Below are positions 24,534 to 63,992 of a stretch of DNA of 64,000 bases, one piece after another. The position numbers and the translations under genes were made by a program. The notes under the pieces are model-generated. The model was given only the letters and a program-made list of their open reading frames with translations. It had not been told where the DNA came from and searched no databases. Within the stretch, counting starts at the first letter, position 1. Each line of letters opens with the position of its first letter. Where the stretch lies: positions 41,664,001 to 41,728,000 of the forward strand of contig NW_025964112.1 in the NCBI RefSeq assembly GCF_023055435.1, read 5' to 3'. The stretch is from Haliotis rufescens (Eukaryota).

Positions 24534-24717
24534 CTGCAAAGTTATCCGTCTCCTCGTTAGGTCGATTCTGTTCCATCCTTGCCTTCTCCTGGAGTGTGTT
24601 GTGGTAGGCCACATTACTCACAACCTGCATGTTTTTCTTGAGGCGCTGGGTTTCTGGGTCGTCAGCCACAGACATTTTTTTGCCTTTTTCTTTTTCAAAG
24701 TTTTCATGGTACTTAAT
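24534..24717 (-). CDS. Lasp: 184-nt exon, last canonical Lasp nebulin repeat: IKYHENFEKEKGKKMSVADDPETQRLKKNMQVVSNVAYHNTLQEKARMEQNRPNEETDNF(A)
   Basis: CCTACTTTTCAG acceptor, CAG|GTAAAC donor, phase 0-1. KYHExFEK...DDPET...SNVAYH is typical of invertebrate Lasp. Confidence 0.95.
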
Positions 24718-26010
24718 CTGAAAAGTAGGAAACGACAAAAATGAAGGAAAAGATAAAAGGACAAGTTATCTGCTGAAACACTGAATTTGTACATTATTTG
24801 AAACGAGAAAAAAATTCAAAGTGATTTGAAAGACAAGTTTTAACAGTGAACAACATGAATTTCACAGCTTTATCATAAATATTCAAGATACTTATTGAGC
24901 AATCACAAAGGATTCTCAGTAATAATACCAAATGTTTCTGACAACTGAAGTCTGAAAAGTCTGAAAAGTACATGGTACTAGGATTCTGAAAAGGAACAGT
25001 GGTCATTATTAGGAGAAGAAAATGTCAGTCTTGAACAGGACTGAAAGAAAGAAAAACTCACGCACATTAGAAAGAAAAAGAAAATATATTAAATATGGTG
25101 TACATAAACTGTGTACACTTGTAGAAAATTGCAAGAAAGAAATCAGGTTCTCAAAATATACAATTATAGATGCATTATTTCACATGAGTTTGCCAGCAGA
25201 AGACCAAAACAATAATATCTCTAAATATTTTGTTGTTGGAAGACTCTCATCAAGTCAGCAAGATGTATGATAATCACATAAATAATAACAAAATACCACT
25301 TGTACTCAGCTAATAAACACAAATTAATATAGTGGTGGCACAGTCACATTAAAAGTGTGTCATATCTACATGTAGTATCCTAGCAACTAGACATAATGAC
25401 CAATCAGAGCAAGGCTTTTAAAAGCAACATAATGCCATATGCATTTTTATACAGGATTTGCACAGCCTATGTGTTCTGATACACAAATCTGTATAGTTCA
25501 ATCTTTCCACAGAATTAGAATCCCCATTTGGCATCTGTTCATTAAAGACCTAAACGCTCCTTAAAATATATTGGGGTACCTTGTAAATCAATGTGTCCTA
25601 TCCACAAAGAGTTGTGTATCTCAATACTCATCACTGTACACTTAAATACCTACCACATATTGAGGGAAGGGGTGGGGCGGAGAAAATCAGAAGCAGGTTT
25701 GAAAAACAATTACTCAATTTGACACAGGACACAATAGAATGTTTACTTAATTTATGTTTTTCTTTTAAAAATATGTTTCATCACAATGCTCCGTTGAGGA
25801 CATGTGCAGAAGGAAAATTCCACTGTGACATGTACTACTCAAAGAAGTTGAAACACCAGATTCATATCATGACGGATTAACTATAGTCATATGAAAACAT
25901 TTGTGTTCTTTAATTTCTTTGAGTAGTACATTTAGACAATTGCTTTGGATGGGAATCTCCGCCCGAACCCCATCCCTATGATAAATATTGACGAGTCCCT
26001 CAGGACATAC

Positions 26011-26805
26011 CGTAGCAGAGGTCAGTTGTCCATACAGGAGGCAGATAACAAGTCCAGCCAGTCATTGCTGCTCCACAGCCTCACTTGGAGGCTCTTGTGG
26101 AAGCTCTTCAGCTGGTTCTTGAGGAACCTTGGTCACAGGTTCTTCTGCAACCTTTTTAGCTGGTTCTTGAGGAACCTCGGTCACAGGTTCTTCTGCAACC
26201 TGTTTAGCTGGTTCTTGAGGAAGCTCTTCAGCTGGTTCTTGAGGAAGCTCTTCAGCTGGTTCTTGAGGAACCTTGTTCACAGGTTCTTCTGCAACCTTTT
26301 CAGCTGGTTCTTGTGCAACCTTCTTAGCTGGTTCTTGAGGAACCTCTTTAACTGGTTCTTGAGGAAGCTCTTTAACTGGTTCTTGAGGAACCTTGTTCAC
26401 AGGTTCTTCTGCAACCTTTTCAGCTGGTTCTTGTGCAATCTTCTTAGCTGGTTCTTCTGCAACCTTCTTAGCTGGTTCTTCTGCAACCTTCTTAGCTGGT
26501 TCTTCTGCAACCTTCTTAGCTGGTTCTTGAGGAACCTCTTTAACTGGTTCTTGAGGAACCTCTTTAACTGGTTCTTGAGGAACCGCTTTAACTGGTTTCT
26601 GTGAAACTACTTTAGTAGGCGCTTGAGAGAGCTGTTTGGGTGGCTCCTCAGGAAGTTGTTTGGGAGATTGTTTGGGCACCTGTTTAGGAGCTCCAAGTTT
26701 GGGTTCTTGTAGTAATTGGGTTGGGGATTGAGGGGTGGGGGATTGAGGAGTGGGGGATTGAGGAGTGGGAGATTGAGGTGTGGGTTGGGAGGGTTGTGGA
26801 GCCAC
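26011..26805 (-). CDS. Lasp: Large PEVK-like exon: (PTPQS)n followed by about 21 8-aa [QE]EP[AV]KK[VL][AP]-type repeats, with an in-frame TGA at 26064-26062
   Basis: TTCTTGCTTACAG acceptor directly before the ORF's first codon (phase 0), 247 open codons, and an ACG|GTATGT donor at 26010. Length 795 nt is a multiple of 3. Confidence 0.75.
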
Positions 26806-29803: not shown

Positions 29804-29908
29804 CCCCTTCAGAATCTGTTTGTTCCCCTGGTGGCGCCTCATCTCCACAGTGTCGGCCACTTGAGTGTATTTGCTCTTGGACATCTCAAAGTCTTTGTGA
29901 TAGTCTAC
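29804..29908 (-). CDS. Lasp: Nebulin-repeat exon VDYHKDFEMSKSKYTQVADTVEMRRHQGNKQILKG
   Basis: 105 nt, CAG acceptor, GTAGGA donor, phase 0-0, YHxDFE...AD pattern. Confidence 0.93.
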
Positions 29909-30502
29909 CTGATAGGACGCATACAAGACGGTAGAAATTTTGCATTGCTTGTCATCTTAAATTCCTTTAATATTTGACAATATTTTGACGATTTTCAGAT
30001 ATAGAAACAAATTGTTTGCATAGTACTTTATGGATTACAAGTGAAAAATCCTTATTTCATTGATACAGTTTAGGAGTAAATTGTGGAGTGAGTGAGTGAG
30101 TTTGGTTCAACACTGTTTCAACAGTATTTCAGTTATAGCATGGCATGTCAGTGTGATGTGGGAGCAAGTCTAAATGACACAGCTCAAATACGTTCAGCAC
30201 TTGGGCGAGACCCACAAGCACAGGTATGGTGCTGACAAACCTAGGTTTCAGGGCAGATCAGGATTTGGGATTTGAACCCATGATCAGAATATCCTCCAAG
30301 CAACTCTTTACAGGGACCACTGTGCCACCCATGCTTCAAACTCCAGTCATGCTATTTGCATAAAAAATGGCATTTCAATATATTCTATTACTACTTACGG
30401 ATTAGAACTTGTCTTATAAACTTTTAACTCCAGAAATCTGTTTACATCAGCAGAAGACAGATAAATTATATTTTTGCGTCTAATTAACAGCAGTAATTAT
30501 AC

Positions 30503-30607
30503 CTCACTAGCCAGTTTCTGATTGGTCATACTTCGTTTGAAATCGAGGGCATCAGCTGGCATGTTCACAGACATCTTGCCCTTCTCAAATTCACTGTGGT
30601 ACTCCAC
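30503..30607 (-). CDS. Lasp: Nebulin-repeat exon VEYHSEFEKGKMSVNMPADALDFKRSMTNQKLASE
   Basis: 105 nt, TAG acceptor, GTATAA donor, phase 0-0. Confidence 0.92.
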
Positions 30608-31054: not shown

Positions 31055-32584
31055 ACACTCAAATGTCAATAATCACCCTCAGACACTCCTAGTTTGACAC
31101 AAGTACAATGTCTGGATGTAGACCCAAAAATTGCACCAGATTGTGGAGCAAAGTCACCCTTTAATACCCTGGGCCGATTAGCTATGTTTTTGAGCCGATT
31201 TGCAATAACACGAGGCTAAAAATAGCCATCCAATCAAATCCCTATAAATGAGAGAAATTTTGCACTGTTAGAGAAATCCTGTGCTAATTTGTGCTAGAGA
31301 TAGGAGCGATGGAAGCTGTACTGCCGCTACAGAAGCAAAGATGGAATACCCCAGATAATGGAGGATGCTTCACTTGTCTTCAGAGCACAACCATTAAGAA
31401 CAGGACACATCAAGCATCTTTCCAAAATACTCTTACATCATGACAAATACTATTACATCATGATAAACATGATGTATATATGTAATCACAAAAAATCAAA
31501 TATGTAAATATACTTATATCAGCATCAATTTACAGATGGAAGATTTTAACATCATGAAGAAGATTATGTTTAAGAATGAGTCATTTAACTCGTAAGTTAA
31601 CCTACAAATAAGTCTATGAATTACAATGATACTCATTACATTTAAATCCGAAGTCCAGAAAACACAAGAATGCAAACTAGAACACATGCTCATATCAAGC
31701 GAAGAAAAGCGTACATCTTGGATGCGTAACTGCCACACAAAATTATTGGGGAAGAAGCCGAGCTTATGACATAAGTCTGTGTAGGCACATGTTATCTACA
31801 CTGTGAACCCGTAGAGATTCCATGCTGCCATTAAGAACATCTTAACGATCACAAAGATCAGTTCTAGCATTATATAACAGAATTATTGGACAAACATACA
31901 CAACTGAGAACACATGTTGAAGCATTTCAAACACTTATCCAAGATTGGCAGAATGATTTTGAAATTTTGAAATGACAATTCAATAAATAACAGCAATAAC
32001 AAAATAACAAATAATAATATAGAGTAAGTCAATCTACATCAACGACAGGACACTAATCACACCAGTCACGCTTTCAGGGATGAGAATCATTTCAGCTGAG
32101 TCAGGTTTCTAGGGGGATATCCCTACACAGTAATACATCTCATACAAATTATACCGTGATCTTAAAAGGTTCACTTCCAAACAAAAAGTCACTTTGAAAG
32201 AGTGAGCGAATGAGTTAGCAGAGGCAACAGTCCGCTTTAAGAAAAGTATCATCACAATGAATTCCTTGTCACAACATTTAGGGCAATTCTCAGTATTTTC
32301 TCAAAATATCAAATCTGATCTTGACCCTGGTCCAGGACCGACTATCCATGTGTATATGAGTGTATCACAGTCACACGTCTGTATGAGTTGAGTGAGTGAG
32401 TGAGTTACATTTTTCTGCATCAGTAATGTTACAGCATGGTCTGACAAAGTCCAGCATCAATGCCTGGCATTAATTGAACAACAACATACACACAAATCCT
32501 TTACACCTGCATGAACCTATTCACATTTACTTTTTGCAGTCAAATATCTCTGCTTGGTATCTCACTGGCTAACAACTACACTTC

Positions 32585-34537
32585 TTCAACAATTAGCTTC
32601 AGGGCAACCTGGATCTGATTGGTTAACAAGATAATACATTTCTCCAACAACTACCTTCAGGGCAACCTGGATCTGATTGGTTAACAAGATGATATATTCT
32701 CCAACAACTACCTTCAGGGAAACCTGGATCTGATTGGTTAACAAGATGATATATTCTCCAACAACTACCTTCAGGGAAACCTGGATCGGATTGGTTAACA
32801 AGATGATATATTCTCCAACAACTACCTTCAGGGAAACCTGGATCGGAATGGTTAACAAGATGATATATTCTCCAACAACTACCTTCAGGGCAACCTGGAT
32901 CTGATTGGTTAACAAGATGATATATTCTCCAACAACTACCTTCAGGGAAACCTGGATCGGATTGGTTAACAAGATGATATATTCTCCAACAACTACCTTC
33001 AGGGAAACCTGGATCGGAATGGTTAACAAGATGATATATTCTCCAACAACTACCTTCAGGGTGACCTGGATCTGATTGGTTAACAAGATGATATATTCTC
33101 CAACAACTACCTTCAGGGCAACCTGGATCTGATTGGTTAACAAGATAATACATTTATCCAACAACTACCATCAGGGCAACCTGGATCGGATTGGTTAACA
33201 AGATGATATATTCTCCAACAACTACCTTCAGGGCAACCTGGATCGGATTCGTTAACAAGATGATATATTCTCCAACAACTACCTTCAGGGTGACCTGGAT
33301 CTGATTGGTTAACAAGATGTTATATTCTCCAACAACTACCTTCAGGGCAACCTGGATCTGATTGGTTAACAAGATAATACATTTATCCAACAACTACCTT
33401 CAGGGCAACCTGGATCGGATTGGTTAACAAGATGATATATTCTCCAACAACTACCTTCAGGGTGACCTGGATCTGATTGGTTAACAAGATGATATATTCT
33501 CCAACAACTACCTTCAGGGAAACCTGGATCGGATTGGTTAACAAGATAATACATTTCTCCAACAACTACCTTCAGGGAAACCTGGATCGGATTGGTTAAC
33601 AAGATGATATATTCTCCAACAACTACCTTCAGGGAAACCTGGATCGGATTGGTTAACAAGATGATATATTTTCCAACAACTACCTTCAGGGTGACCTGCA
33701 TCTGATTGGTTAACAAGATGATATATTCTCCAACAACTACCTTCAGGGCAACCTGGATCTGATTGGTTAACAAGATAATACATTTATCCAACAACTACCT
33801 TCAGGGCAACCTGGATCGGATTGGTTAACAAGATGATATATTCTCCAACAACTACCTTCAGGGCAACCTGGATCGGATTCGTTAACAAGATGATATATTC
33901 TCCAACAACTACCTTCAGGGTGACCTGGATCTGATTGGTTAACAAGATGTTATATTCTCCAACAACTACCTTCAGGGCAACCTGGATCTGATTGGTTAAC
34001 AAGATAATACATTTATCCAACAACTACCTTCAGGGCAACCTGGATCGGATTGGTTAACAAGATGATATATTCTCCAACAACTACCTTCAGGGTGACCTGG
34101 ATCTGATTGGTTAACAAGATGATATATTTATCCAACAACTACCATCAGGGCAACCTGGATCTGATTGGTTAACAAGATGATATATTCTCCAACAACTACC
34201 TTCAGGGCAACCTGGATCGGATTGGTTAACAAGATGATATATTCTCCAACAACTACCTTCAGGGTGACCTGCATCTGATTGGTTAACAAGATGATATATT
34301 CTCCAACAACTTCCTTCAGGGTGACCTTGATCTGACTGGTCAACAAGATGATATATTCTCCAACAACTACATTCAGGGCGACCTGGATCTGTCTGGTCAA
34401 CAAGATGATATATTCTCCAACAACTACCTTCAGGGTGACCTGGATCTGACTGGTCAACAAGATGATATATTCTCCAACAACTACCTTCAGGGTGACCTGG
34501 ATCTGATTGGTTAACAAGATGATATATTCTCCAACAA
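32585..34537. repeat. 57-bp minisatellite with occasional 58-bp units, about 34 copies
   Basis: Unit CCAACAACTACCTTCAGGGCAACCTGGATCTGATTGGTTAACAAGATGATATATTCT; starts at 32644, 32701 and 32758. Confidence 0.96.
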
Positions 34538-35076: not shown

Positions 35077-35181
35077 CGCACTCAGAATTTTCTGATTAGA
35101 TTGGTGGCGCTTCATATCGGCAGAATCGGCAACTGTTGTGTATTGACTTTTCGTATGCTCAAAATCTTTGTGATATTCAAC
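35077..35181 (-). CDS. Lasp: Nebulin-repeat exon VEYHKDFEHTKSQYTTVADSADMKRHQSNQKILSA
   Basis: 105 nt, CAG acceptor, GTATGA donor, phase 0-0. Confidence 0.93.
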
Positions 35182-35836: not shown

Positions 35837-35941
35837 CCCACTGATGTTTTTCTGGTTGTCCTTATGGCGTTGCATCTCTAGAGGGTCGGCAACCACAGTA
35901 TAGTGAGATTTCTCCTTCTCAAAGTCACTGTGGTATCGAAC
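35837..35941 (-). CDS. Lasp: Nebulin-repeat exon VRYHSDFEKEKSHYTVVADPLEMQRHKDNQKNISG
   Basis: 105 nt, AAG acceptor, GTAATG donor, phase 0-0. Confidence 0.93.
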
Positions 35942-38572: not shown

Positions 38573-38677
38573 CAAGCTAGCATTCTTGGTGGCAGCCATG
38601 GCAGTTTTGAGGGTCAAAGGGTCAGCAATAGACTTGACCTTGCCCTTGGACTCCTGAAAGTCTTTCTTGTACTGAGT
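38573..38677 (-). CDS. Lasp: Nebulin-repeat exon TQYKKDFQESKGKVKSIADPLTLKTAMAATKNASL
   Basis: 105 nt, CAG acceptor, GTATAA donor, phase 0-0, YKKDF nebulin core. Confidence 0.93.
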
Positions 38678-39127
38678 CTGGGAATTGATGATGAATAATT
38701 CATGTTCATGACTTATGTAAAACACACATTTATTACATGCAAACAGATTATCTAGACTTGTATAGCTGGCCAGTCCTTGTTTTATCCCCTTCACAGAATG
38801 CCAGGATAACAACAAGTACCATCTTTTACTGTCTTTTGGTATGACACAGCTGTGGATCAAACCACCAGGCTGACGCTCTATCAGGTTTTACTGAGTACTG
38901 ACAAACAAAAAGTAAATGTTTTAGTTTCGTTACCAGAAGCTGAGAGATAATATACTTTGCACTGATGGCAAATAAAATGGTTATATGTTTGTCTCATACA
39001 GGTTAAGAGACAAATCTTCAAAATTCATCATACATCAAAAGTATTTTATCTCAGAGATTACATGAGACACAATAAAGCAGCATTTTTTAAAGGGTTTTAA
39101 TATCATATTTATCATCATCAACCATAC

Positions 39128-39232
39128 CGTGCTAAGGTTCTTTGTGTTTTCAAGACATTTCCTGACCGACATGGGATCAACCACCGTCGTGTAGTTTCCC
39201 TTGGTCTTCTCGAAGTCAGCATGGTACACATT
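39128..39232 (-). CDS. Lasp: Nebulin-repeat exon NVYHADFEKTKGNYTTVVDPMSVRKCLENTKNLST (cluster)
   Basis: 105 nt, TAG acceptor, GTATGG donor, phase 0-0. Confidence 0.92.
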
Positions 39233-39495
39233 CTAACAGTAACAAATTAGACATTAAAACCTTCATCAGATGAACTGCAGCAAGCTTGGACACCTACTTC
39301 CTGTTTAGACTAGACAAGGTGGACGGACCAAATATTTTGTCTTTTTTTTCAACAACTTAGGATTCCCAGTACATGTTAATTTAAACTGGTGAGCAATTCC
39401 TATAGAGTATTCAAAGCACACAATTAAAACACCTTTAATTCCTTCCTACTGAAATCTACAGCTATCACAACACAACACAAGGGTTTACCCCATAC

Positions 39496-39600
39496 CGCAC
39501 TAAGATTCTTGGTATTCTCAAGACACTTCTTCATGACCAGGGGATCCACAACCGTAGTATAGTCACTTTTGGTCCTCTCAAAATCAGCATGGTACCGAGT
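39496..39600 (-). CDS. Lasp: Nebulin-repeat exon TRYHADFERTKSDYTTVVDPLVMKKCLENTKNLSA (cluster)
   Basis: 105 nt, TAG acceptor, GTATGG donor, phase 0-0. Confidence 0.92.
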
Positions 39601-40139
39601 CTAGCTCAACGAAACCAATCAGAAATTAATCTGGTTCAAAAACATTGAAAGAACAAACTCGGCTTCCTAAGCCTGACAGACTTTTAACAACTGAACTACC
39701 AATTGATGCATTACAGGCTAGAGTTTTCAGCCACTAAGTACTATTCGAGCAATATCACTGTGGGGGAACCAAATATGGGCTTCACACGTTGTATCGAACT
39801 GGTAAATCAATGTTCCCGTGTGAATGTTTAACCACAAGGTCACCCAATTGACCAAATGCTACATCTACAAGCCATGCTACAAGCTCTTGAATAAGCTTTT
39901 GAGAAAGTTGATATTATCCTTTGAACTTTTAAAGATTCCCTCGACATGCATCTCAACACCAACAAAGTCCGCAAGTGAACAAGGAGTGGCAGCAATATTG
40001 AGCAGTATACAATGTGCCCATATTTGCAAATGAAGCCTCGTCTTATTTTGGCCCAATATCCTAGTGACAGTGCAACTACTTCTACGGCTAAGTTTCTACA
40101 AGACATCACAACATCTACTAAACAAACTACGCTGCATAC

Positions 40140-40244
40140 CGAACTTAGATTCTTGGTACTTTCAAGACATTTCTTCATAACCAGGGGATCCACAACCGTA
40201 GTGTAGTCACTTTTGGTCTTCTCAAAATCCGCATGGTAGGCACT
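40140..40244 (-). CDS. Lasp: Nebulin-repeat exon SAYHADFEKTKSDYTTVVDPLVMKKCLESTKNLSS (cluster)
   Basis: 105 nt, CAG acceptor, GTATGC donor, phase 0-0. Confidence 0.92.
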
Positions 40245-40673
40245 CTGGCACAAGTAAACCAATCTGTTATAAGATTTATTTAAGTGGTTGAAACCATCTA
40301 GGTCCAACTCCACGAACACATCAGCGAAAGTAGCCATGCAACAGTGTGCAAGCTCTTGAACAAGTCTTTCAGAACACGTTAAGTGACGTTTTACACTATT
40401 TTAGCAATATTCCCATTGGGGAATCAAAAATAGGATTCGACACGACAAACAAACACTTTAACCACCAGACCCAATACACCCTTAAGAACAGAATAAAGTT
40501 GTCTTTAATGATTCTCAAATTGTTTCAAGAGGTTTGGTAGAAACACTAATTCTCTGCATCAGGCAATATAAGAAACTGAGACAAGGCGATCCCAAATCAA
40601 AATTTGACTTTAGCAGATTTCTGATCTAACTACAACAAAACAACAGCTAGGTGCTCATTGAACTTCATCATAC

Positions 40674-40778
40674 CACGCTAAGATTCTTGGTACTTTCAAG
40701 ACATTTCTTCATGACCAGGGGATCCACAATCGTAGTATAGTCACTTTTCGTCCTCTCAAAATCAGCATGGTAGGCACT
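40674..40778 (-). CDS. Lasp: Nebulin-repeat exon SAYHADFERTKSDYTTIVDPLVMKKCLESTKNLSV (cluster)
   Basis: 105 nt, CAG acceptor, GTATGA donor, phase 0-0. Confidence 0.92.
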
Positions 40779-41131
40779 CTGACATAATGAAACCCATATG
40801 TTATTAATCTTTTATCAATCTGTTCATGTTGTATTATCTAACAAACTCCTGGTTGAGTCTATACCTTCTTCACATCAGCAACAGAAGCCATGCTACAGTG
40901 TGCCTGACTTTGACTGGACTGAGTTTTTTGGCTTGACAACACATATCTACCTTTCATGATTCTCAATAATTATTTTAAGAGGTCATTGCAGGACAAATTT
41001 CTTGAAAATGTGAATGATTTTGTAGATGCATCAAGACTCTGCTTCAGACAATATGGGCACTGGAGACATGGCGATACCAAATCTAAACTACGACAACACA
41101 ACAGCGACGTGCCAATAGAACAGCATCATAC

Positions 41132-41236
41132 CGCACTAAGATTCCTGGTACTTTCAAGACATTTCTTCATGACCAGGGGATCCACAACCGTAGTATAGTC
41201 ACTTTTCGTCCTCTCAAAATCAGCATGGTAGGCACT
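41132..41236 (-). CDS. Lasp: Nebulin-repeat exon SAYHADFERTKSDYTTVVDPLVMKKCLESTRNLSA (cluster)
   Basis: 105 nt, CAG acceptor, GTATGA donor, phase 0-0. Confidence 0.92.
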
Positions 41237-41627
41237 CTGGCACAAGGAAACCCATATGTTATTAATCTGTTCCTGTTGTATTATCTCACAACCTGCGTCA
41301 AACTCCTGGTTGACTCCAAACCTTCTTCACATCAGCAACAGAAGCCATTCTACAGTGTGCCAGCTCTTGTACTAATCTGTGATTTTTGGCTCGACAAGCA
41401 AGCACTTAAACAACCAATATTCCCTCCACCATCCCCAATAACAGCAAATATCTAGCTTTCATGACTCGGAATAATTATTTTAAGAGGTCATTGCAGGACA
41501 AAATTCTTGAAAATGTGAATGATTTTGTAGATGCAACAAGACTCTGCTACGTAAACAAACTTGTGAGCAGATTTCTGATGTAACTTCGACAACACAACAG
41601 TGACGTGCTAATTGAACTTTATCATAC

Positions 41628-41732
41628 CACGCTAAGATTCTTGGTACTCTCAAGACATTTCTTCATGACCAGGGGATCCACAATCGTAGTATAGTCACTT
41701 TTCGTCCTCTCAAAATCAGCATGGTAGGCACT
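41628..41732 (-). CDS. Lasp: Nebulin-repeat exon SAYHADFERTKSDYTTIVDPLVMKKCLESTKNLSV (cluster; same peptide as exon 40674)
   Basis: 105 nt, CAG acceptor, GTATGA donor, phase 0-0. Confidence 0.92.
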
Positions 41733-42163
41733 CTGGCACAAGGAAATCAATCAGAAATGAACCTTTCACTGACATGTGATAACTTTGATATCCACCAACA
41801 GCTTATACCTACCGTAATATCATGGTAACAAACAATGCTACAGTGTGCTAAAACATTCAAGTCTTATTCCAGTCAACCACCATACAAATACACATGTCGC
41901 ACACCAAGTGCTTTCAAACAACAACAGCTGAGCCTCTCATATGTTTCCAGTGATGTTGAAAACAGATCAGCAATCATATGAATTATGATCATGATAACAG
42001 TTAGTAGCCAAAAAACTTTTGATAAGTACATAATACATTCCATATTTGGATTTGAAACTTGCCCTGTGATGGCCAACCACCCAATTGTGACTTGAGACAG
42101 TGGACTACATATACTGACTTCACACAAACACCACAACATATATCTGGCACCACTGCATCATAC

Positions 42164-42268
42164 CGCACTTAGATTCCTGGTGTTTTCAAGGCATTTCTTC
42201 AGGTGGAGGGGATCTACAACCGTAGTATAGTCACTTTTGCTCTTCTCAAAATCCGCACGATACAGAGT
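42164..42268 (-). CDS. Lasp: Nebulin-repeat exon TLYRADFEKSKSDYTTVVDPLHLKKCLENTRNLSA (cluster)
   Basis: 105 nt, CAG acceptor, GTATGA donor, phase 0-0. Confidence 0.92.
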
Positions 42269-42284
42269 CTGGCATAAGGAATCA

Positions 42285-42599
42285 TGAATGAGTGAGTATG
42301 GTTTTACGCCACTTTTAGCAATATTACAGTTGGGACACGAGAAATGGGATAACACATCATACCCATGTGGGAAATTGAACCCGGGCTTTTGGTGTAACAA
42401 GCTAACGCTTTAACTAATAGTCTGAATGAGTGAGTGAGTGAGTATGGTTTTCAACGCTTTTAGCAATATTCCAGCAATATCACGGCGTGGGACACCAGAA
42501 ATGGGCTTCACACATTGTAGCCATGTCGGGAATCAAACCCGGGTCTTCGGTGTGACGAGCAAACGTTAAAACCACTAGGCTACCCGACCGCTCCTCACC
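42285..42599 (-). mobile_element. Two adjacent SINE A copies (about 42285-42418 and 42431-42599)
   Basis: Both match the family consensus. The second has TSD AGTCTGAATGAG and sits at the head of the first. Confidence 0.88.
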
Positions 42600-43137
42600 A
42601 GTCTGAATGAGCATGAATGAGTTATGCGTGAGTAGAGAATCTATTACAACAAAATGTTGAAAGAACAGCTTTTGGGCAAACATGTTACAACCGACAGAAC
42701 ACAAATCTACCACAACGGCACATCAACAAGCCATGCTACAGTGTGCAAGCCCTGGCATATGCACTCCAGAAAAGATGATACTCTCTAATAGTTCCAAGAT
42801 GAAACAACTGAAATAGGTCAATACAAGGACGAAAAGCACTGAATTAACAGTGAGTGAATGAATGGGTTTAACATGGCTTAGCTTGTTTCAGTTATATCAT
42901 ACTGACTTCGAGCCAACCAGTCTTTGTTTTATCAAGTTAATGATGAACCGGTGACAGGTACCTTCCTTTAACGTATTTTGTTACGACATGGCTTGGGATT
43001 GAACCACCGATCTTCTGTTCTCCAGGCAGAACCTCTATCCACTTGACCATGGAGGCAGTCTCATACAAGAGAATCAAGCTGCCCTGGGTGATTGTGCTAC
43101 TCAATTGTGGTCAATACAACATCATCAACCATTCTAC

Positions 43138-43246
43138 CCAACCAAATTTAATTCCTTGTGTTATTTCAAGACATTCTTCCATTAATGTGAATCTGCAAAA
43201 CCATTAGTAATGTCCGCTTCTCTAAATGAGCATGACACACAGATTA
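43138..43246 (-). pseudogene. Decayed copy (pseudo-exon) of the cluster nebulin-repeat exon
   Basis: On the + strand, ATTCCTTGTGTTATTTCAAGACATTCTTC and CTTCTCTAAATGAGCATGACACACAGATT align with ATTCCTGGTGTTTTCAAGACATTTCTTC and CCTCTCAAAATCAGCATGGTACAGATT of exon 44464. It has indels and no acceptor AG at the homologous position. Confidence 0.65.
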
Positions 43247-43519
43247 TCATACAACACAGCAGGCAGTATGGACTCTTAAGCTACAATGTTGTCAAAAGAC
43301 TAAGCGCCAATGTCTGGTGCCTATTTTCTGCCATGAAGACATCGTAACTAATACCATGACATTGTTTCAGTATAGTTAGTGTCGTCAGTAACTGCTCAAA
43401 TGGTATACATTCTAAAACTAGCACCCCAAGAAAGAATCATTAAACCTTGTGGGTAGGACTGTCAATTAGCCGAGCCTAGATCCCCTTTAAATTAGAACAA
43501 AGTGACATAACTATCAGTG

Positions 43520-44015
43520 ACAAATATAACACAAATGGTTCCTATTCCAAATACAGCTCTGATGATTCCTCATATTTCTGATACACCTCAGATGGTTCCA
43601 TATATTCCAAATACAATTCAGATGGTTCCTCATATTCCAAATACTGCTCTGATAGTTCTCCATATTCCAATTACAGCTCTGATGGTTTTCCATAGTCCAA
43701 ATACAGCTCTGATGGTTCTCCACATTCCAAATACAGCTCTGATGGTTCCATATATTCCAAATACAGCTCTGATGGTTCTCCACATTCCAAATACAGCTCT
43801 TATGGTTCTCCATATTCCAAATACAGCTCTGATGGTTCTCCATATTCCAAATACAGCTCTGATGGTTCTCCATATTCCAAATACAGCTCTGATGGTTCTC
43901 CACATTCCACATACAGCTCTGATGGTTCTCCATATTCCACATACAGCTCTGATGGTTTTCCATAGTCCACATACAGCTCTGATGGTTTCTCATTTTTCCA
44001 AATACAGCTCAGATT
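43520..44015. repeat. 30-bp minisatellite, about 16 copies (GATGGTTCTCCATATTCCAAATACAGCTCT)
   Basis: Direct inspection. Confidence 0.95.
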
Positions 44016-44463
44016 ATATCCTCATACACATATAAATGACCAAAGAAGGTTCAGCACGAAGGACAAAATATTTTTCCTTGGTCTCAAACCAGAACATTAG
44101 ACACTGTGCAGCAAACTCAGAGTAAAAGTATAAATAAAAGGAACTAGACCATCCAAAGATTTGTTTCCAACATCTTCAAACATATTTTACACTTTGGCTA
44201 AATGCGGATTTAACACATAAAACATATGCTGGGAATCAAACCATTATTCCATGAATGAACACATTATCCGCTGGGCTACAGTCACATCCACAAAGCATTG
44301 CTTTGAAGCCTGTATAACTGTTGTATGGCTGAATATGACAAGTTGCAGTATATTTGCAGCGAATAATGGACACTGGCTTTGCTATTAGCAAGCATGCTAC
44401 TATCTATGCGGCTATCGCCGAGATGCTGCACTAGTACAATACAACAGCATTATTTACCCATAC

Positions 44464-44568
44464 CGAACTCAAATTCCTGGTGTTTTCAAGACATTTCTTC
44501 ACATGGAGAGGATCGACAACTGTTGTATAATCACCTTTGGTCCTCTCAAAATCAGCATGGTACAGATT
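44464..44568 (-). CDS. Lasp: Nebulin-repeat exon NLYHADFERTKGDYTTVVDPLHVKKCLENTRNLSS (cluster)
   Basis: 105 nt, TAG acceptor, GTATGG donor, phase 0-0. Confidence 0.92.
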
Positions 44569-44915
44569 CTAGCACAAGGGATATATACCAGTATACTGTT
44601 GCATAGTTTGTAGCCATTATAATTGATTTTGATTTTACAAATACAAAGAAAATTGTTTTTCATTTCAATCGGAACATCACACTTAAATAATGCTACACTT
44701 TGTTAAAACTAGTGAACAGTTAATCTGAGTAGCATACACATATTTATAACAGATTTAATTTGAACATTTCAGTAACATATCTCCATTGAACTACCAGAAT
44801 AGGTTACTGGTATCCACAAGACAAGGCCTTAAGGTGTCATCAACATATAGACTTATATTACCCAAAGGGAGACAACTTGGTCATATAACAGTTAACACAA
44901 TAAAAGCGTAGCTAC

Positions 44916-45020
44916 CACGCTGGCATTCTTGGAGTTCTGTAGAAGCTGTTGCAGTCCATTGGGGTCAGCAATGACGGTGTAGATGCTCTTGCTCTTCTCA
45001 AACGCGCTGTGGTACTGATT
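44916..45020 (-). CDS. Lasp: Nebulin-repeat exon NQYHSAFEKSKSIYTVIADPNGLQQLLQNSKNASV
   Basis: 105 nt, TAG acceptor, GTAGCT donor, phase 0-0. Confidence 0.92.
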
Positions 45021-48000
45021 CTAGTGACATCAGACAAACAACTAACTATTCAGGAAAGCCATCAAACTTTAAGACAAAAAATGATTAAGAAAATAAGTAT
45101 TAAAAAATGTGATCTTCCTAGCGATAAAGACGATGGTAGAATCATTGATGTTGATAATGACGACGATGATGGTGATGTTGCAAGGCCTTATTTGTTATGC
45201 ATTATATATTTGTGTGTACCCATTTAATTCATCTCAGATGCTCTGAAGAAATCTTTAGGTCCTGATGGTGTAAGGATTTGTCTCATATGGTGTTGACGGT
45301 TTTCCTTCACAATTGTATAAATCATAAAATGAGAACACACAAACTGTCCCAAACACATCAAGGCGTCAAAGTTCAACAAATATACATACAATACATGTAT
45401 ATTTCAACCATATTTACAAAATACATACACACAATTTTTTAGTACAAAAATATAAAAAATAATTTACAAATATATAAACAGGATTCATCTTTAAATACTT
45501 GTGTCTTGTGATGTTCAGGATACTACATCTAAAATGGAAGGAAACCATGCAGTCACTCTACCGCTGAACACAGTTACCCAATAAGAGTTGTCTCCCTTTA
45601 TTCAACCTCCGCAAGCCTGAAAGAGCAAGTAGGTCAAGCCCTGAAAAATCAAGAGTGAATAATTACCCCAAAAATGGCAAATATTTCTTAATGTGTATTC
45701 TGAATGTGCATCCATGCGTACAATTAAAATATCGTGACAACCAGAGCTTATCCAACAATGTTCATTATCTAGGTTTTATGACAAGATAAAATGAGGGACA
45801 AAACATTTCAATGATGAGGCTCCATTTACTTTTCTGCTGAAAGGCACATTTGACCATAGCATCATCTGCTGAATTGGTTAAGCATACATTATGCATCGTA
45901 AGCAAAGAGCAACATAGCCTTCAGCATATACACAACCCATACAGGTATATGTGCTTAAAATCACCTTGTTTGCTACCACATTGATTCTAATCATCTCGCT
46001 CAACTCAGCAATCATTCAATTTCTCCAGAAATAAGCAGAGAAAATATCAAATAATTACCACCAGATGGCAACAAACACTTTGGCCTGCACAAGGGGGCCA
46101 TATTTACTCTCACACAACACAAGCAACATGGCTAATTTTGTCTTCCATCAAATCAATACAGATGCAGCAAAGACAATCTCTAAACCGTGTGAAAAGCAAT
46201 TTCATCTCTGTCATAGCACATCACTGAGATACGAAAGTCTGGGCCTAGACTGTCCGGCTTACGTTCAGGTTCACTGGGAAGACATCAGCACACTTGCATT
46301 CCTATTGCTAATATGGGGCAACCTAAGAGCACTTAATTTTAACAACTTATTCTGCAATTTTATGTAATAGGTACGTGTAACAGCCAGAAAATCAATGAAA
46401 GTAATTCACTTTTTTTACATATTTTATAGATTCTCTTTAAGAGATGAGCAAATGAGTTTGCTTTTATCTTCAAGCAATATTGCTGCTTTCAGGCTCTGAA
46501 TGGGTGAGTCTTTGAGTGAGTTTGATGTCATATGCCACTTTTAGCAACATTTCAGCCATATCACAGACTGGGACACAAGAATTAGACTTTACACGGAATA
46601 CATGGATTAACCATGTTGGGAACCAAACTCGGCATTAAGATTCTGAACACCTAAACCTTCACCCCACCATCCCTCAGACTAAGAATAAGCTTCAGACATC
46701 TACCTATGTGTGGAATCAAACTACAAATTGACTGACAAGTGAGTGAGTGAGTGAGTGAGTATGGTTTTACGCCGCTTTTAGCAATATTCCTGCAATAACA
46801 CGGCGGGAGACACCAGAAATGGGCTTCACTCAGTGAACCCATGTTGGGAATCGAACACGAGTCTTTGGCTCTGACTGACAAGCATGTCATTTACCACAAA
46901 GTCAACCATATAAAATGTTTAACAGATGTTATAAAGAAAAGTCAGTGGAAAGACTGCACCACAAATTTCAGTCTCATTCTACCTTAAGGTTTATTTTCAC
47001 TCTAGTGCATAGTAAATACAGCAGTAACATATATCATTAACTTTTATTAATGTCTTCAGCTCCCATGAGTTCATAATTAAGCTGCCAAACTATGTGAGGT
47101 GAGGTGAGGTGAGGTGTGGTGAGGTGAGGTGAGGTGAGGTGAGGTGAGGTGAGCTTAACATCACAACCAAGATTATTGCACTTTTACAGTAACATGTATG
47201 CACACATATGTGTGTATGTTGCGACTTGTTCTAGTCCAGACTAATGCCAGTTTTATGATGCTAGCCCACTGAGATACCATGAATACCCCACTCAGACACA
47301 GTATACTGACTCCGAGCTGACCAGTCCTTATTCTATCCCTTAATGCTGAGCACTAGGCAGGGTAACAACAAGCACCATCATTTAACATCTTTTGGTATGA
47401 CATTCGGGGATCAATGACCAGTGCAAAACAATTCAACTCTGGCATAGGACAAGACTCACTCCCAGAAAAGTGCTCCCAGAGGAATGTTCTAATTACTTTT
47501 CTTTCAATTTCATGTTAATTGATCTGTTAATGTTAGCAGGTCAGGAAACCGGTTGACCTGGAACTGAACAGAAGCTACTACTGAGCTGCTTCTGAGGTAG
47601 ATAGGTGGTAAGCAGGACAATTACAGCTCACATAGGCCTCATCTCCAAGAAACGTCAGGTGGTAATTGGCTCCCATATTGTTCAAGGTTGCTGGGATGGA
47701 CTGGTGGAGCTACCTCATAATGCTGCGTGGACACTTATAGATTTATGACATTGGCGGAGAACAGAGTCTCAGATGAAGGATCGCAATATGGACTAACCCT
47801 GATTGTTTCGCGATGCATACAAATGTTATTGAATTGGTTACTGAGGTCCTGGCAGTCTAGCAGATAATTGCATACAGATCCTGTGCTTCTATACTATTCC
47901 ACTTTCGATAGGAATATTTTTTTCTTTCCATGATACACCAAACTGATTATAATATGTGTAGTGCATATTTAAATATATCTGACATATTTAATAGTTGAGT

Positions 48001-50719: not shown

Positions 50720-50824
50720 CAGACTGGCATTCTTGGTGTTAAGCATGTGGCGCTGTAGCTCAGGGTTATCAGGTATCACTGTATATGAGGACTTGAACCT
50801 CTCGAACTCACTATGGTACTGTAC
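50720..50824 (-). CDS. Lasp: Nebulin-repeat exon VQYHSEFERFKSSYTVIPDNPELQRHMLNTKNASL
   Basis: 105 nt, TAG acceptor, GTAACT donor, phase 0-0, PDNPE motif. Confidence 0.94.
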
Positions 50825-57459: not shown

Positions 57460-57714
57460 TCACCACCACCATCATATCATCATNNNNNNNNNNNNNNNNN
57501 NNNNNNNNNNNNNNNNNNNNNNNNNNNNNNNNNNNNNNNNNNNNNNNNNNNNNNNNNNNNNNNNNNNNNNNNNNNNNNNNNNNNNNNNNNNNNNNNNNNN
57601 NNNNNNNNNNNNNNNNNNNNNNNNNNNNNNNCATATCATCATCTCAACATCATCATATCAACATCATCATCATCATATCAACATCATCATCATCATCATA
57701 TCATCATCACCATC

Positions 57715-60530: not shown

Positions 60531-63500
60531 ACCCTACTTCCTTCAACACTTTACACAGGAATAAGAAGGCCAGGTGTGTGTTTATTTTGTATATGCAAAG
60601 TAAATATGTCTCATGAACCAAACCAAGGTAAGGTTAACAGTATACTGGTGAAAGCAACACCATCTCCTAATATAGCCCATAATCTTTGTGGCTGCATAAA
60701 CACAATAAGTGAGTGAGGGAGTAAGCGTTTATTGCCACAGTCAGCAATATTCCAGCTGTATCCCATCGGCTTGTAAACAATTGAATTTGGGGAAGACAAA
60801 CCAGTTGTTGATATTTTGAGCAAGGGCCCACATCGTTGGGGCGAGGGTATTAGAGGTTAATTCTATGCAGGACTTAGGGTCGAACATTCATTGAAATTAC
60901 TTCTGTGCTAATGATACATAAGAATTAACATTGACATCTACTGTTCCATTGAGTGAGTAATAATTTTTAATGTTGTTGTTTGTTTGTTGCACTGATCAAA
61001 ATACCAGCTGTATGCCGGTGATCTGTAAATACTTGAGTCTGGACCAGTAATCCAGTGATTGATATCATGAGCACCGATCTACGCAATTGGGATATGAAAT
61101 GTATCAACCGAGCCTGACAACCAGATCCCATCAGCCGCCTCTTGCGACAATCATGGGTTGACCAATCAGATCTTCAGAATTCAAATATCATTTTTCATTA
61201 TTTTTTTTCAAACACTTAGAGCAGTGAAGGAACATAAAACATATATTTTTTAAAGATTAAACAAAATTGACTTTCTAAGAACAAGATCTTGGATAGTGAA
61301 GCACACAAGGCAAAATGATGCCTTTAATGTGACAACCACTGATCAACATTTATAATGGAATCAAAAATACTTCAAATGAACGTTAACTTGTAAAATATAC
61401 ACATGCATCACATGTTTATTTAGGATAGGCAAAAGCATTACGTAAGAAAAGAAAAAATATGTCGCTACAATTGTAACGATAATAAACATCATAGAACTGA
61501 ATCAAACAAAAACTTCAGAACAAACCCTTATGGAGATCCTGACTTAAAAACATATCATTACAGTTACATTAAAAAACATGGTCCAATTAATAACGAACAG
61601 AAGCGGCACTGTTATCTAAAGGAAATGCAGAGAACAAGTGATCTTTTTCCAGGGACTGTTGGCAATTTAACATTTCTGACTTGCACAATTAGGGCAGTTG
61701 TTAGGGGAGTAGCAGTGTGCTGCTTCAGCTAGTGCCATTAATTACACAACTGTGCTGCAAGTTGGCCGACAGCTCCCCCAACACCAGAGCACTTCCAGAC
61801 AGGTTATTCCCAGATACTCCCTCCTGGTGCTCATGGATTGTTCAGCCACAGCGTTCATTTAAACATTTAACTTTTTTTCTGAAATGACTTGACTGCATAT
61901 CAAAAGAAAGCATGTTATTTTTTTTCTAAAGACCTTGGTTTGATACCCCCTTGGGTACACGTTGTTCAGAATATCAATACGGTCACTGTCTGGTCCAAAC
62001 TCAACTATTTACTGACCGCAGTCATACAGCTGCAATATTGCTGCAAACAGCAAACAAACAAATCCTATGAACAATAGTGAAGAAATATGTGGAGGTTATC
62101 AGTTGCATGTGAGTAAGTGAGTTTTTATTAATTGTCACTTTGAACAGTACTCCAGTTATATCACAGCATATCAGCATGTTGTAGGAGGAAAGCCCAAAGT
62201 GATGCAGGTCTTAGTCGATTACCACTGTGGTGAAACCCATGAGCTAGGGTATTGGGTTGACAAACCTAGAAACGAAATCAGGGTGGCTGGATTCTAACCA
62301 CCAATCATTGACTTCTGACATGCCTAGAGGATGCAACTCGGCATAGGGAATAATAGCGGAGCCTTCGGTAACTGGGCCATATGAATTATTAACATTGACA
62401 TATGAATTATGCAATACTGTGTCACCCATAATGCAACTTGTCCACACGCTTGCACTTGTTCATGGAATAATTACAAATACCTGAATTTGCAATTCTCAAA
62501 CGGACTATAGGGAGTACTGTAATCATTATGAATAAAAAATCCATTCCTTTGACTCTCAATTAGTTTCTGTCATAAAAATAAATGTTAGCATTACATAAAC
62601 AACTTTCCCATGCTATCAACCCCTCACTGTCAAAATTGTTTTAATGAATGGCAATTCATATCAAAGAATACCATCATGTCACAAATGGAAAATTCGCCCC
62701 AAGACAATATCCAAGCTCTTAAATTGTTCCAACTTATTATATTTCGTGAGTGTGGTTAATGATTGACATCATCATAAACTGTTCAAACTCATCAGGAATA
62801 TAAGGGAGATAACTCCATGTGGGAAGAGCTAAACCAGAAGTGATCAAGTGGACAGCACTTGATGTGAAGAGCTTCATCATGTCAATGCTATTGGTGGTAT
62901 GGTGACTTTCACAAGGCTAGCATCATCCCTGCAGCAAAATACTAGGACATCGTAAGGCCAAACGTCTATGGTTGACAGGGATTTAAGGAGTAAAACTGCA
63001 ATAAGATGCAAGATATAGTTTTAAAAACTTGAATATTTTCTATTTTATTTTGAATGATTATGAAAGACTTTTATGGCTTATTAAAAGAAAAAAAAGCAAC
63101 CTTTTTTGGAAAAACAGTTTGTATCCCTTGAATAACTACAATTTCATTTTGACAGAAAAGTTTTTTCTTTCCATTACATGTTTACAGTGGACAGAGACCT
63201 TTCATCCATTGATATTTTCCTGCTTCTTCCAAAACAAGGCGGACAGGCAACTATATATAAATTCAAATAATCTCTATTCATTTCCTGCTTTATGGCTTTT
63301 GGCAGTGGTCGGTCGATTCGGAAACCAAAAAAGTGTCGTCTTAGTGACACAGGAGAAGAAAATAAGCTTCGGCGCGAAGTGCTTGCAGGAATATTAATGG
63401 TTTGTTGCATGTCATGAATTATTACGATTTCTTATCAGAAACAGTTAAAGCTTGGGAATAAACCTCTCCATCAAGCATTTAGAAGGATGTTGGAAATGTT

Positions 63501-63887
63501 CACATGTTGAAATTATATTTTAAACCCTGTAAACTTGATAAATCACACAGAATGGTTTATGCAAAATGATATGGAAAATGATACTTATAACTTGAAATTG
63601 CACAGCAAACTAGTTCCAAACCAAACCTTTGTGCCATTCTTCTAATGCAAGAACAACAGGACGATGGCGCCTCATTGGAGATCAGGTAATGTTCTTCACA
63701 GTCACTACAGCCGAAACTATTAGACAAAGACACGGCAAATCAAAGAGTACTGGCACACAAAGCCATAAAACTGTGGTCAATGGCTAGATAATTGAACCTA
63801 GGGTGTTGTCATAGCAAATCAAGGAAAACACAGCATGATATATGAGAACACGGCAATCCAAAGCCTCTATGTTCACCACCATCATAC

Positions 63888-63992
63888 CAGACTGGTATTC
63901 TTGGTATTTTGCAGATGTCGCAGGAGTTCAGGATTGTCCGGTATGGCAGTGTAGCTACCTTTCTGTTTTTCGAAGTCACTATGGTATTCTCT
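63888..63992 (-). CDS. Lasp: Nebulin-repeat exon REYHSDFEKQKGSYTAIPDNPELLRHLQNTKNTSL (most 5' exon in the window)
   Basis: 105 nt, TTTTGCAG acceptor, GTATGA donor, phase 0-0. Confidence 0.94.

What the first reader, a model, noticed from the sequence alone, without database searches (positions are those of the whole stretch)
24534..63992. A nebulin-like long Lasp built from one-exon-one-repeat phase-0 modules
Seen in sequence: 16 exons of exactly 105 nt plus the canonical last-repeat exon give at least 17 nebulin repeats. Every junction splits the SxxxY actin-binding motif at the same place (S-x | x-x-Y). Established: vertebrate LASP1 and Drosophila Lasp have two repeats, nebulette has about 23, and each repeat binds one actin subunit. 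Some longer invertebrate Lasps have been described, so novelty is lineage-specific. Inference: this is an independent expansion toward a nebulette-sized thin-filament protein. Any subset of exons stays in frame, so splicing could tune the actin-binding length.
Basis: partly seen in the sequence, partly recalled or inferred. Interest (0 to 1): 0.8.

Follow-up and report, generated by a model that had tools for sequence, protein, structure and literature searches.

The report
Abalone Lasp gene with 16 nebulin-repeat exons
The window holds most of the single Lasp (LIM–nebulin-repeat–SH3) gene of the red abalone, in which 16 interchangeable 105-base exons each add one actin-binding repeat and are alternatively spliced; this contradicts the textbook "two repeats in invertebrates", but RefSeq already annotates the gene as "nebulin-like".

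Summary
On the minus strand there are 16 exons of exactly 105 nt. All are phase 0 with AG/GT borders, and each encodes one 35-aa nebulin-type module. A last-repeat exon follows at 24534-24717, and a Lasp/nebulette-type SH3 exon lies at 1398-1571. The LIM exons and the first-repeat exon lie 2-52 kb beyond the window end.

The N gap (57484-57631) sits inside the 13-kb intron between e1 and e2. It is flanked by ATC microsatellite and interrupts no exon.

The genome is Haliotis rufescens. RefSeq "nebulin-like" (773 aa) maps at 100% identity and uses 8 of the 16 cassettes, giving 10 repeats. Congeners are annotated only with the 2-repeat form.

Spliced RNA contigs show e10→e11, e3→e11 (skipping e4-e10), exon3→e3, exon3→e11 and e11→e12. 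So the cassettes are alternatively spliced.

A repeat tree puts 12 of the 16 cassettes in two abalone-only clades. Other molluscs have 3-6 cassettes at the same site.

This locus holds all 17 matches found in the genome. A transcript with all 16 cassettes (18 repeats) is not shown.

Verdict: real, a new variant of a known family, moderately interesting. The scan had only first-reader notes on this same window.

The parts
63888..63992 (-). cassette exon e1 (105 nt, phase 0)
   Evidence: AG/GT borders and 35-aa nebulin module; Pfam Nebulin 21.1 bits. Groups with e2 and Gigantopelta cassette 1. Not in the RefSeq model; no RNA evidence obtained.
50720..50824 (-). cassette exon e2
   Evidence: present in RefSeq protein P0152 at 100% identity
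44916..45020 (-). cassette exon e3
   Evidence: RNA contigs join exon 3 to e3 and e3 to e11 in run X5. Not in the RefSeq model.
44464..44568 (-). cassette exon e4 (Cys-containing young family)
   Evidence: in P0152
42164..42268 (-). cassette exon e5 (young family)
   Evidence: Not in the RefSeq model. dN/dS to its paralogues is 0.06-0.30.
41628..41732 (-). cassette exon e6 (young family)
   Evidence: 104/105 nt identical to e8. Not in the RefSeq model.
41132..41236 (-). cassette exon e7 (young family)
   Evidence: Not in the RefSeq model.
40674..40778 (-). cassette exon e8 (young family)
   Evidence: Not in the RefSeq model.
40140..40244 (-). cassette exon e9 (young family)
   Evidence: An X4 contig ends at its acceptor and runs on into sequence that is not the adjacent intron (record 18). 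Not in the RefSeq model.
39496..39600 (-). cassette exon e10 (young family)
   Evidence: Splice joint e10 to e11 in runs X1 and X4, from two studies. Its peptide is in P0152.
39128..39232 (-). cassette exon e11 (oldest of the young family)
   Evidence: Joints e10 to e11 and e3 to e11; loose ends show exon 3 to e11 and e11 to e12.
38573..38677 (-). cassette exon e12
   Evidence: The loose end at 39128 in X5 reads into the e12 start. Its peptide is in P0152.
35837..35941 (-). cassette exon e13
   Evidence: Pfam Nebulin 23.8 bits
35077..35181 (-). cassette exon e14
30503..30607 (-). cassette exon e15
29804..29908 (-). cassette exon e16 (ends K-G, not S-x)
   Evidence: Not in the RefSeq model.
24534..24717 (-). 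last-repeat exon (completes one repeat, holds one whole repeat and the start of the linker; phase-1 donor)
   Evidence: Pfam Nebulin 25.7 bits. Groups with the 'last' repeats of other lophotrochozoans, 99/98.
4491..21466 (-). linker exons of the RefSeq model. Approximate tblastn limits: 21356-21466, 14084-14248, 12689-12838, 9766-9834, 9247-9327, 7789-7851, 6616-6669, 4491-4550.
   Evidence: P0152 mapped at 96-100% identity
1395..1571 (-). SH3 exon with stop codon
   Evidence: Pfam SH3_1 1e-14; acceptor read. Closest solved chains are the nebulette, LASP1 and nebulin SH3 domains, E about 1e-19.
57484..57631 (.). assembly gap inside the e1-e2 intron, flanked by ATC microsatellite

Best explanation
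The window carries about 64 kb of the roughly 115-kb, minus-strand LASP-family gene of Haliotis rufescens. All 17 genomic matches to the repeat profile lie in this one locus.

The protein plan is an N-terminal LIM domain, a run of 35-aa nebulin-type actin-binding modules, a proline-rich linker and a C-terminal Lasp/nebulette-type SH3.

Sixteen symmetric phase-0 exons of 105 nt lie between the constitutive first-repeat exon (just past the window end) and the last-repeat exon (24534-24717). Each exon boundary falls inside the S-x|x-x-Y motif. Any exon can therefore be joined to any later one and still rebuild an intact repeat.

The exons behave as cassettes. Skipping all of them gives the canonical 2-repeat Lasp. 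The annotated model includes 8 of them (10 repeats). RNA contigs show further combinations. The upper limit is 18 repeats.

The array grew by tandem exon duplication, mostly in the abalone lineage. The bursts are e4-e11 and e13-e16, and purifying selection has kept the exons while the introns decayed.

Shown here: the exon anatomy, the domain identities, alternative splicing and the lineage-specific clades. Inferred: each module binds one actin subunit, as in nebulin, so splicing sets the length of actin filament covered (about 5.5 nm per module, up to about 100 nm). The long forms would then act like nebulette, as anchored thin-filament stabilisers in muscle, rather than as a full-length ruler.
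For: Exon anatomy:
- 17 profile hits lie on one strand only.
- 16 exons are exactly 105 nt with AG/GT borders and phase 0.
- The SH3 exon is confirmed.
- LIM exons 1-2 and the first-repeat exon lie upstream.

Identity of the gene:
- RefSeq 'nebulin-like [Haliotis rufescens]' (P0152, 773 aa) sits on a contig of 65,595,138 bases, the same length as C334.
- It maps at 100% identity and uses e2, e4 and e10-e15.
- Pfam on P0152 gives LIM 46.9 bits, Nebulin 174.9 bits in 7 stretches, and SH3 53.6 bits.

Isoforms and splicing:
- 2-repeat isoforms (exon3 to last exon) are annotated in H. asinina, H. rubra and H. cracherodii.
- GT..AG joints: e10 to e11 in X1 and X4, and e3 to e11 in X5. Loose ends equal to the end of exon 3 occur at both e3 and e11, and a loose end reads into e12.

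Selection and origin:
- dN/dS is 0.06-0.37 for nearly all young-exon pairs.
- Exon identity is 80-99%, while intron similarity is lost beyond about 30 nt of the splice sites, except for the e6/e7/e8 units.
- Repeat tree: e4-e11 clade 99/99; e13-e16 clade 93/91; e1 and e2 group with Gigantopelta cassette 1 at 95/95.
- The same insertion site carries 3-6 cassettes in octopus, oysters, scallops, mussels and Gigantopelta, 1 in the annelid Owenia and 0 in Lingula.
- A genome-wide profile search found all 17 matches in this locus.
Against: - No molecule with more than 8 cassettes is on record. The RefSeq model is a computational prediction.
- Logan contigs are short and break in the near-identical exons, so co-inclusion along one transcript cannot be read from them.
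- In run X5 the young exons e4-e10 have no more depth than the introns, and e3 is spliced straight to e11.
- e1 and e16 have no expression evidence here.
- Tissue, localisation and actin binding were not tested.
- The runs are only guessed to be RNA and also hold unspliced contigs.
- The repeat tree rests on 35 columns.
Confidence: 0.85

Rival explanations
1. A full-length, nebulette-sized isoform with all 16 cassettes (18 repeats) is a major product, for example in foot or shell muscle. The shorter combinations would be minor or non-muscle forms.
For: All 16 exons keep open frames, AG/GT sites and pyrimidine tracts. The young exons are under purifying selection. In X1 and X4 the bins holding e4-e10 have more depth than neighbouring intron bins.
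Against: The RefSeq model has 8 cassettes. Direct joints skip seven exons (e3 to e11), and exon 3 joins e3 or e11 directly, skipping e1 and e2. No protein with more repeats was found in the 425-1353 aa range.
Confidence: 0.25
2. Part of the array (the near-identical e5-e9, perhaps also e1 and e16) consists of recently duplicated exons that are rarely or never spliced in. They would be evolutionary raw material rather than working parts.
For: They are absent from the RefSeq model. In X5 their depth is not above intron level. A short-ORF search around e6 found nothing.
Against: dN/dS is well below 1, and the exons are conserved while most introns have diverged. Splice sites are intact. Exon bins have higher depth than intron bins in X1 and X4, and an X4 contig ends at the e9 acceptor and continues elsewhere. 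Near-identical exons are hard for short-read assemblers and gene predictors, so their absence from models is weak evidence.
Confidence: 0.2
3. The copy number of the near-identical units is an assembly artefact: collapsed or duplicated units, or haplotypes laid in tandem.
For: e6 and e8 differ at 1 of 105 nt. The window contains assembly gaps.
Against: The introns between the units are mostly different from one another. Contigs from independent runs of three organism labels tile the e5-e10 introns and exon borders at 95% identity or more (table 8). The gaps are not in the array.
Confidence: 0.04

Closest known systems
Lasp / LASP1 (Drosophila Lasp, vertebrate LASP1, C. elegans F42H10.3)
   Same: The order LIM, nebulin repeats, variable linker, SH3 is the same. 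The 2-repeat splice form (exon 3 to last exon) seen in congeners is a canonical Lasp. The SH3 and LIM domains are closest to solved LASP1, nebulette and nebulin domains.
   Different: This gene has 16 optional extra repeat exons, against a fixed 2 repeats. The literature held here describes invertebrate Lasp as 2-repeat and stresses rigid domain spacing.
Vertebrate LASP2/NEBL locus (LIM-nebulette and nebulette from one gene)
   Same: One gene yields a short LIM-repeats-SH3 protein and a long multi-repeat SH3 protein. The extra repeat exons are inserted at a site that splits a nebulin repeat (bioRxiv 10.64898/2026.10.05.756842). The abalone repeat region aligns with nebulette at 27% identity over its whole length, E 1e-47.
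   Different: Nebulette drops the LIM domain and has its own N-terminus and about 23 repeats. The abalone model keeps the LIM domain. The abalone cassettes form their own clades, so the expansion is independent. Whether the insertion sites are homologous was not tested.
Nebulin
   Same: 35-aa modules with a conserved S-x-x-x-Y core, and a C-terminal SH3 of the same subfamily. The modules are mostly encoded one per exon and are alternatively spliced (my own knowledge for nebulin).
   Different: Nebulin has about 185 modules, a 7-module super-repeat with a tropomyosin-site motif, and no LIM. Here there are at most 18 modules, no 7-fold order and no Trp-containing motif.
Other mollusc 'Nebulette-like' or 'nebulin-like' Lasp isoforms in RefSeq (Octopus sinensis, Saccostrea, Ostrea, Pecten, Argopecten, Mytilus, Gigantopelta)
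   Same: The same gene and the same insertion site, with the same 35-aa register and many predicted isoforms.
   Different: They carry 3-6 cassettes. The abalone genome has 16, of which 12 belong to two abalone-only clades.

Membership tests
LASP family (LIM and SH3 protein) | Single N-terminal LIM domain | tested here: met
   LIM exons lie upstream of the window. Pfam LIM 46.9 bits on P0152, which maps to this locus.
LASP family (LIM and SH3 protein) | Nebulin repeats directly after the LIM domain | tested here: met
   Pfam Nebulin 174.9 bits on P0152. Single exons score 13-26 bits.
LASP family (LIM and SH3 protein) | C-terminal SH3 of the Lasp/nebulin subfamily | tested here: met
   SH3_1 1e-14. 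The best solved matches are the nebulette, LASP1 and nebulin SH3 domains.
LASP family (LIM and SH3 protein) | Two (LASP1) or three (LASP2) repeats | tested here: not met
   10 repeats in the annotated model and up to 18 encoded. A 2-repeat splice form is annotated only in congeners.
Nebulette | No LIM domain; own N-terminal acidic region; about 23 repeats; SH3 | tested here: not met
   The only long model keeps the LIM domain. No alternative first exon was sought with RNA data. The maximum is 18 repeats.
Nebulin | Seven-module super-repeats with a conserved tropomyosin-site motif; well over 100 modules | tested here: not met
   17 modules in the window, with no 7-fold pattern in the identity matrix and no Trp in any module.
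Nebulin-repeat proteins in general | One module binds one actin subunit along F-actin | not testable with these tools
   Known for nebulin (reviewed in PMC9140763). It needs co-sedimentation or cryo-EM for the abalone modules.

The most novel reading that the evidence does not exclude
Abalone, and to a lesser degree other molluscs, have independently turned the single ancestral Lasp gene into a nebulette-like thin-filament protein of adjustable length. Cassette choice would set anything from 2 to 18 actin-binding modules per molecule in a tissue-specific way. A PEVK-like exon (26085-26805) could act as an alternative to the last-repeat exon. That would be a protostome parallel to the vertebrate LASP2/NEBL arrangement, and would suggest that the phase-0, motif-splitting exon design was the ancestral substrate from which nebulette and nebulin also grew.
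Probability: 0.3. Interest if true: 0.65.

Novelty: new variant of a known kind. Interest (0 to 1): 0.45.

Why it matters
Reviews and comparative studies treat invertebrate Lasp as a fixed two-repeat protein. They argue that rigid spacing explains why nebulin repeats were so rarely redeployed outside vertebrates (PMC3305314, PMC9140763).

This locus shows a protostome Lasp gene with 16 optional repeat exons, real alternative splicing and recent, selected exon duplications. It gives a natural series of 2-, 3-, ... 10- (perhaps 18-) repeat proteins from one gene.

That series could be used to test how the number of nebulin modules relates to actin-filament stabilisation in muscles that have no nebulin. 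It could also serve as a living model of how nebulette and nebulin arose from a Lasp-like ancestor.

The value is tempered because automatic annotation already lists the gene and similar mollusc isoforms.

Tried and rejected
I stopped typing sequences and rebuilt the seed inside the script from window coordinates only.

Searches used single exons, an alignment of single exons (A1) and database proteins.

3. The one library-wide search used the SH3 exon. Its list was dominated by multi-SH3 proteins, but it yielded P0021, P0050 and P0087, which opened the mollusc Lasp series.

4. TRF did not see the exon array because its period is above 500. A self-BLAST replaced it.

6. A 35-aa exon query was too short. 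The 42-aa open frame around e6 found no short ORFs, so no junction evidence came from protein collections.

7. Literature searches for nebulin or Lasp together with mollusc or Haliotis found nothing. The Fujita et al. paper on invertebrate LASP is not in the library.

8. A regex search for a whole LIM domain failed because the domain is split over two exons. Half-domain patterns found them.

9. I considered and rejected chance ORFs (17 hits on one strand, 0 on the other), a second nebulin-repeat gene elsewhere in the genome, and the gap breaking an exon.


Full report
**What is in the sequence**

The gene lies on the minus strand. A profile built from nine repeats (taken from the window by coordinate) found 17 strong matches, E 1e-6 to 1e-23. 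All lie on the minus strand between 24610 and 63986. Nothing comparable occurs on the plus strand or in the other 24 kb of the window.

Reading the flanks shows that 16 of the matches sit in exons of exactly 105 nt:
- e1 63888-63992
- e2 50720-50824
- e3 44916-45020
- e4 44464-44568
- e5 42164-42268
- e6 41628-41732
- e7 41132-41236
- e8 40674-40778
- e9 40140-40244
- e10 39496-39600
- e11 39128-39232
- e12 38573-38677
- e13 35837-35941
- e14 35077-35181
- e15 30503-30607
- e16 29804-29908

Each exon has a pyrimidine tract and AG acceptor, a GTA donor, phase 0 at both ends and an open frame of 35 codons.

The 17th match is the last-repeat exon, 24534-24717 (184 nt, donor CAG|GTAAAC in phase 1).

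The alignment of the 17 modules has Y3, F7, K11 and D19 invariant. Its consensus is xxYHxDFExxKSxYTTVxDPLxxKxxLxNTKNLSx.

The exon border always falls between S-x and x-x-Y. The Ser is present in 15 of 16 cassettes; e16 ends K-G.

**The assembly gap**

The N run at 57484-57631 lies in the 13,063-nt intron between e1 and e2. Both sides are (ATC)n microsatellite, and no nebulin-like frame abuts it.

e1 and e2 are each complete with their own splice sites. Nothing in the finding therefore depends on continuity or frame across the gap. I did not try to fill it. A hidden exon cannot be excluded but is unlikely in a simple repeat.

**The rest of the gene**

Downstream, the SH3 exon is 1398-1571 plus the stop codon, with acceptor ...ttcttcag|. 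It scores Pfam SH3_1 1e-14. Its best solved relatives are the SH3 domains of nebulette, LASP1 and nebulin, at E about 1e-19.

Upstream, the window is G000:C334:41664001-41728000. In 80 kb fetched beyond the window end there is only one further repeat-bearing exon. This is the first-repeat exon, L002:2383-2467 (window-equivalent about 66.3 kb). It encodes HYPQ...IQSN and ends in phase 0 with donor gtaagt.

LIM exon 2 lies at L002:6369-6485 and LIM exon 1 (MSKKCGKC...) at L007:3071-3142, window-equivalent about 116.5 kb. The gene thus spans about 115 kb.

If every cassette were used, there would be 18 repeats in the Pfam register.

**Whose gene it is**

The SH3 exon search and a follow-up word search identify the organism. 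'nebulin-like [Haliotis rufescens]' (P0152, 773 aa) is on a contig of 65,595,138 bases, the length of C334.

P0152 maps onto the window at 100% identity exon by exon. Its sequence reads: LIM exons, first-repeat exon, e2, e4, e10, e11, e12, e13, e14, e15, last-repeat exon, about ten linker exons, SH3.

Pfam finds LIM, Nebulin (174.9 bits, 7 stretches) and SH3 on it.

So the gene is already annotated, with 8 of the 16 cassettes. e1, e3, e5-e9 and e16 are not in the model.

A profile of the 17 modules searched against the whole 1.33-Gb genome hit only these 17 places. On that evidence this is the only nebulin-repeat gene in the animal. The tool's counts are lower bounds.

**Are the exons spliced, and how?**

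Sequencing runs guessed to be RNA were laid on 39100-45050. They contain joints with CT..AC ends, which is GT..AG on the gene strand:
- 39232/39496 (e10 to e11) in X1 and X4, from two studies.
- 39232/44916 (e3 to e11, skipping e4-e10) in X5.

Loose ends in X5 give three more joins:
- At 45020 and at 39232 they read the reverse complement of the last 27 nt of the first-repeat exon. That exon is therefore joined directly to e3 in one contig and to e11 in another, skipping e1 and e2.
- At 39128 the loose end reads into the start of e12.

Congeners H. asinina, H. rubra and H. cracherodii are annotated only with the form in which the first-repeat exon joins the last-repeat exon, a canonical 2-repeat Lasp.

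Together with the 10-repeat model, this shows that the cassettes are alternatively spliced and that different subsets are in frame, as the phase arithmetic predicts.

What is not shown is a molecule with all 16. Contigs break in the near-identical exons. Depth figures are per contig and cannot be ranked. In X5 the young exons have no more depth than the introns, whereas in X1 and X4 the exon bins stand above their intron neighbours.

**How the array arose**

Exon identities define three groups:
- A young Cys-containing family, e4-e11. Within it, e6-e10 share 92-104 of 105 nt, and e6 and e8 differ at one base.
- A second family, e13-e16.
- The older e1, e2, e3 and e12.

Self-BLAST shows that similarity between units stops 5-33 nt outside the exons. 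The exception is the e8-intron-e7 unit against the e7-intron-e6 unit, at 79% over 688 nt.

Nei-Gojobori estimates among the young exons give dN/dS of 0.06-0.37 for nearly all pairs. dS rises from 0.05 (e6/e8) to above 1 (e11 against the rest). The picture is stepwise tandem exon duplication with purifying selection on the peptide.

In a maximum-likelihood tree of 43 modules (35 columns, so many forks are open):
- e4-e11 form an abalone-only clade (99/99).
- e13-e16 form another (93/91).
- e1 and e2 group with cassette 1 of the vent snail Gigantopelta (95/95).
- All 'last' repeats form one clade (99/98).

Other lophotrochozoans carry cassettes in the same register at the same site:
- Octopus sinensis 6
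- Saccostrea and Ostrea 4
- Pecten, Mytilus and Gigantopelta 3
- the annelid Owenia 1
- Lingula 0

A search with the repeat region of P0152 over proteins of 425-1353 aa found no invertebrate protein with more repeats. Beyond molluscs it found only vertebrate nebulettes, at 26-29% identity.

The site and the design therefore seem old in the group, while most of the abalone copies are lineage-specific.

**How it most likely works**

Shown: the domain plan and the cassette behaviour.

Inferred from the family: each 35-aa module lies on one actin subunit, as solved for nebulin (reviewed in PMC9140763). The LIM and SH3 ends would tether the protein to adhesion or Z-disc-like partners.

Splicing would then set how many consecutive actin subunits one molecule clamps, from 2 up to 10 (annotated) or 18 (encoded). 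Eighteen modules correspond to roughly 100 nm. That suits a nebulette-like stabiliser near the filament anchor, not a ruler for the long thin filaments of mollusc muscle. Tissue specificity is unknown.

**Comparison with the known**

It is a LASP-family member by LIM, nebulin repeats and SH3. It departs from the family's 2-3-repeat rule.

It resembles the vertebrate LASP2/NEBL locus, where extra repeat exons are inserted at a site that splits a nebulin repeat and both short and long proteins come from one gene (bioRxiv 10.64898/2026.10.05.756842). However, the long abalone model keeps the LIM domain.

It is not nebulin: there are no super-repeats, no Trp-containing motif and at most 18 modules.

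The held literature states that invertebrate Lasp has two repeats and that nebulin-repeat proteins are otherwise confined to vertebrates and amphioxus (PMC3305314; PMC4137052). I found no paper on mollusc long Lasps.

**Limits**

- The runs are only guessed to be RNA and also contain unspliced contigs.
- Read laying, the look-up of sequencing runs and the library-wide protein search were single-use.

**Verdict**

It is unproven for a full 17-18-repeat protein and for any thin-filament role.

Novelty: a new variant of a known kind, already auto-annotated and apparently undescribed in the literature held here. Interest: moderate.

Noticed in passing
window 26085-26805 (-): PEVK-like proline/glutamate/valine/lysine-rich open frame of about 240 aa, made of 24-nt repeats, in the intron between e16 and the last-repeat exon and on the gene's strand. 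It has a good phase-0 acceptor (cttacag|) at 26805 and a consensus donor (AA|gtgagg) after 26085 in phase 1. That is the same phase as the last-repeat exon's donor, so it could replace that exon in frame. It is not in the RefSeq model and was not tested with RNA.
   Followed up: partly
window 42284-42681: A roughly 400-bp element in the e4-e5 intron has contig depth of 10^5 or more in all four runs, with many rearranged joints. It is a very high-copy, transcribed interspersed repeat (SINE-like). The same 'FGFTPLLAIFQQYHGGGHQKWASHIV' frame recurs at about 23950, 37860, 48900, 54440 and 56050.
   Followed up: no
window 4491-9327 (-): The linker of the RefSeq protein carries the motif G-x-G-F-[RQ]-T-T-Y three times, each on its own small exon. 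Congeners have it too (P0021, P0151). Its function is unknown.
   Followed up: partly
window 32582-34537 and 43543-44014: Two large intronic minisatellites: 57 bp x 34 copies at 93% identity, and 30 bp x 15.7 copies. Both give long spurious open frames on both strands.
   Followed up: no
window 11124-11894 (-) and 21266-23167 (both strands): Long proline-rich or repetitive open frames inside the linker introns, for example 256 aa of 'PPVNTHLPH / PTCQYTPAP' units on the gene's strand. They are either minisatellites or unannotated alternative linker exons.
   Followed up: no
window 14886-15027: A second assembly gap, in a linker intron between the exons at about 14248 and about 21356. It lies outside the finding and touches no exon of the RefSeq model.
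   Followed up: no
window 44726-44728 (run X4, record 23): An unspliced 1931-nt contig covering e3, the intron and e4 carries about 336 extra letters at this point compared with the assembly. This is an insertion/deletion polymorphism in the e3-e4 intron.
   Followed up: no
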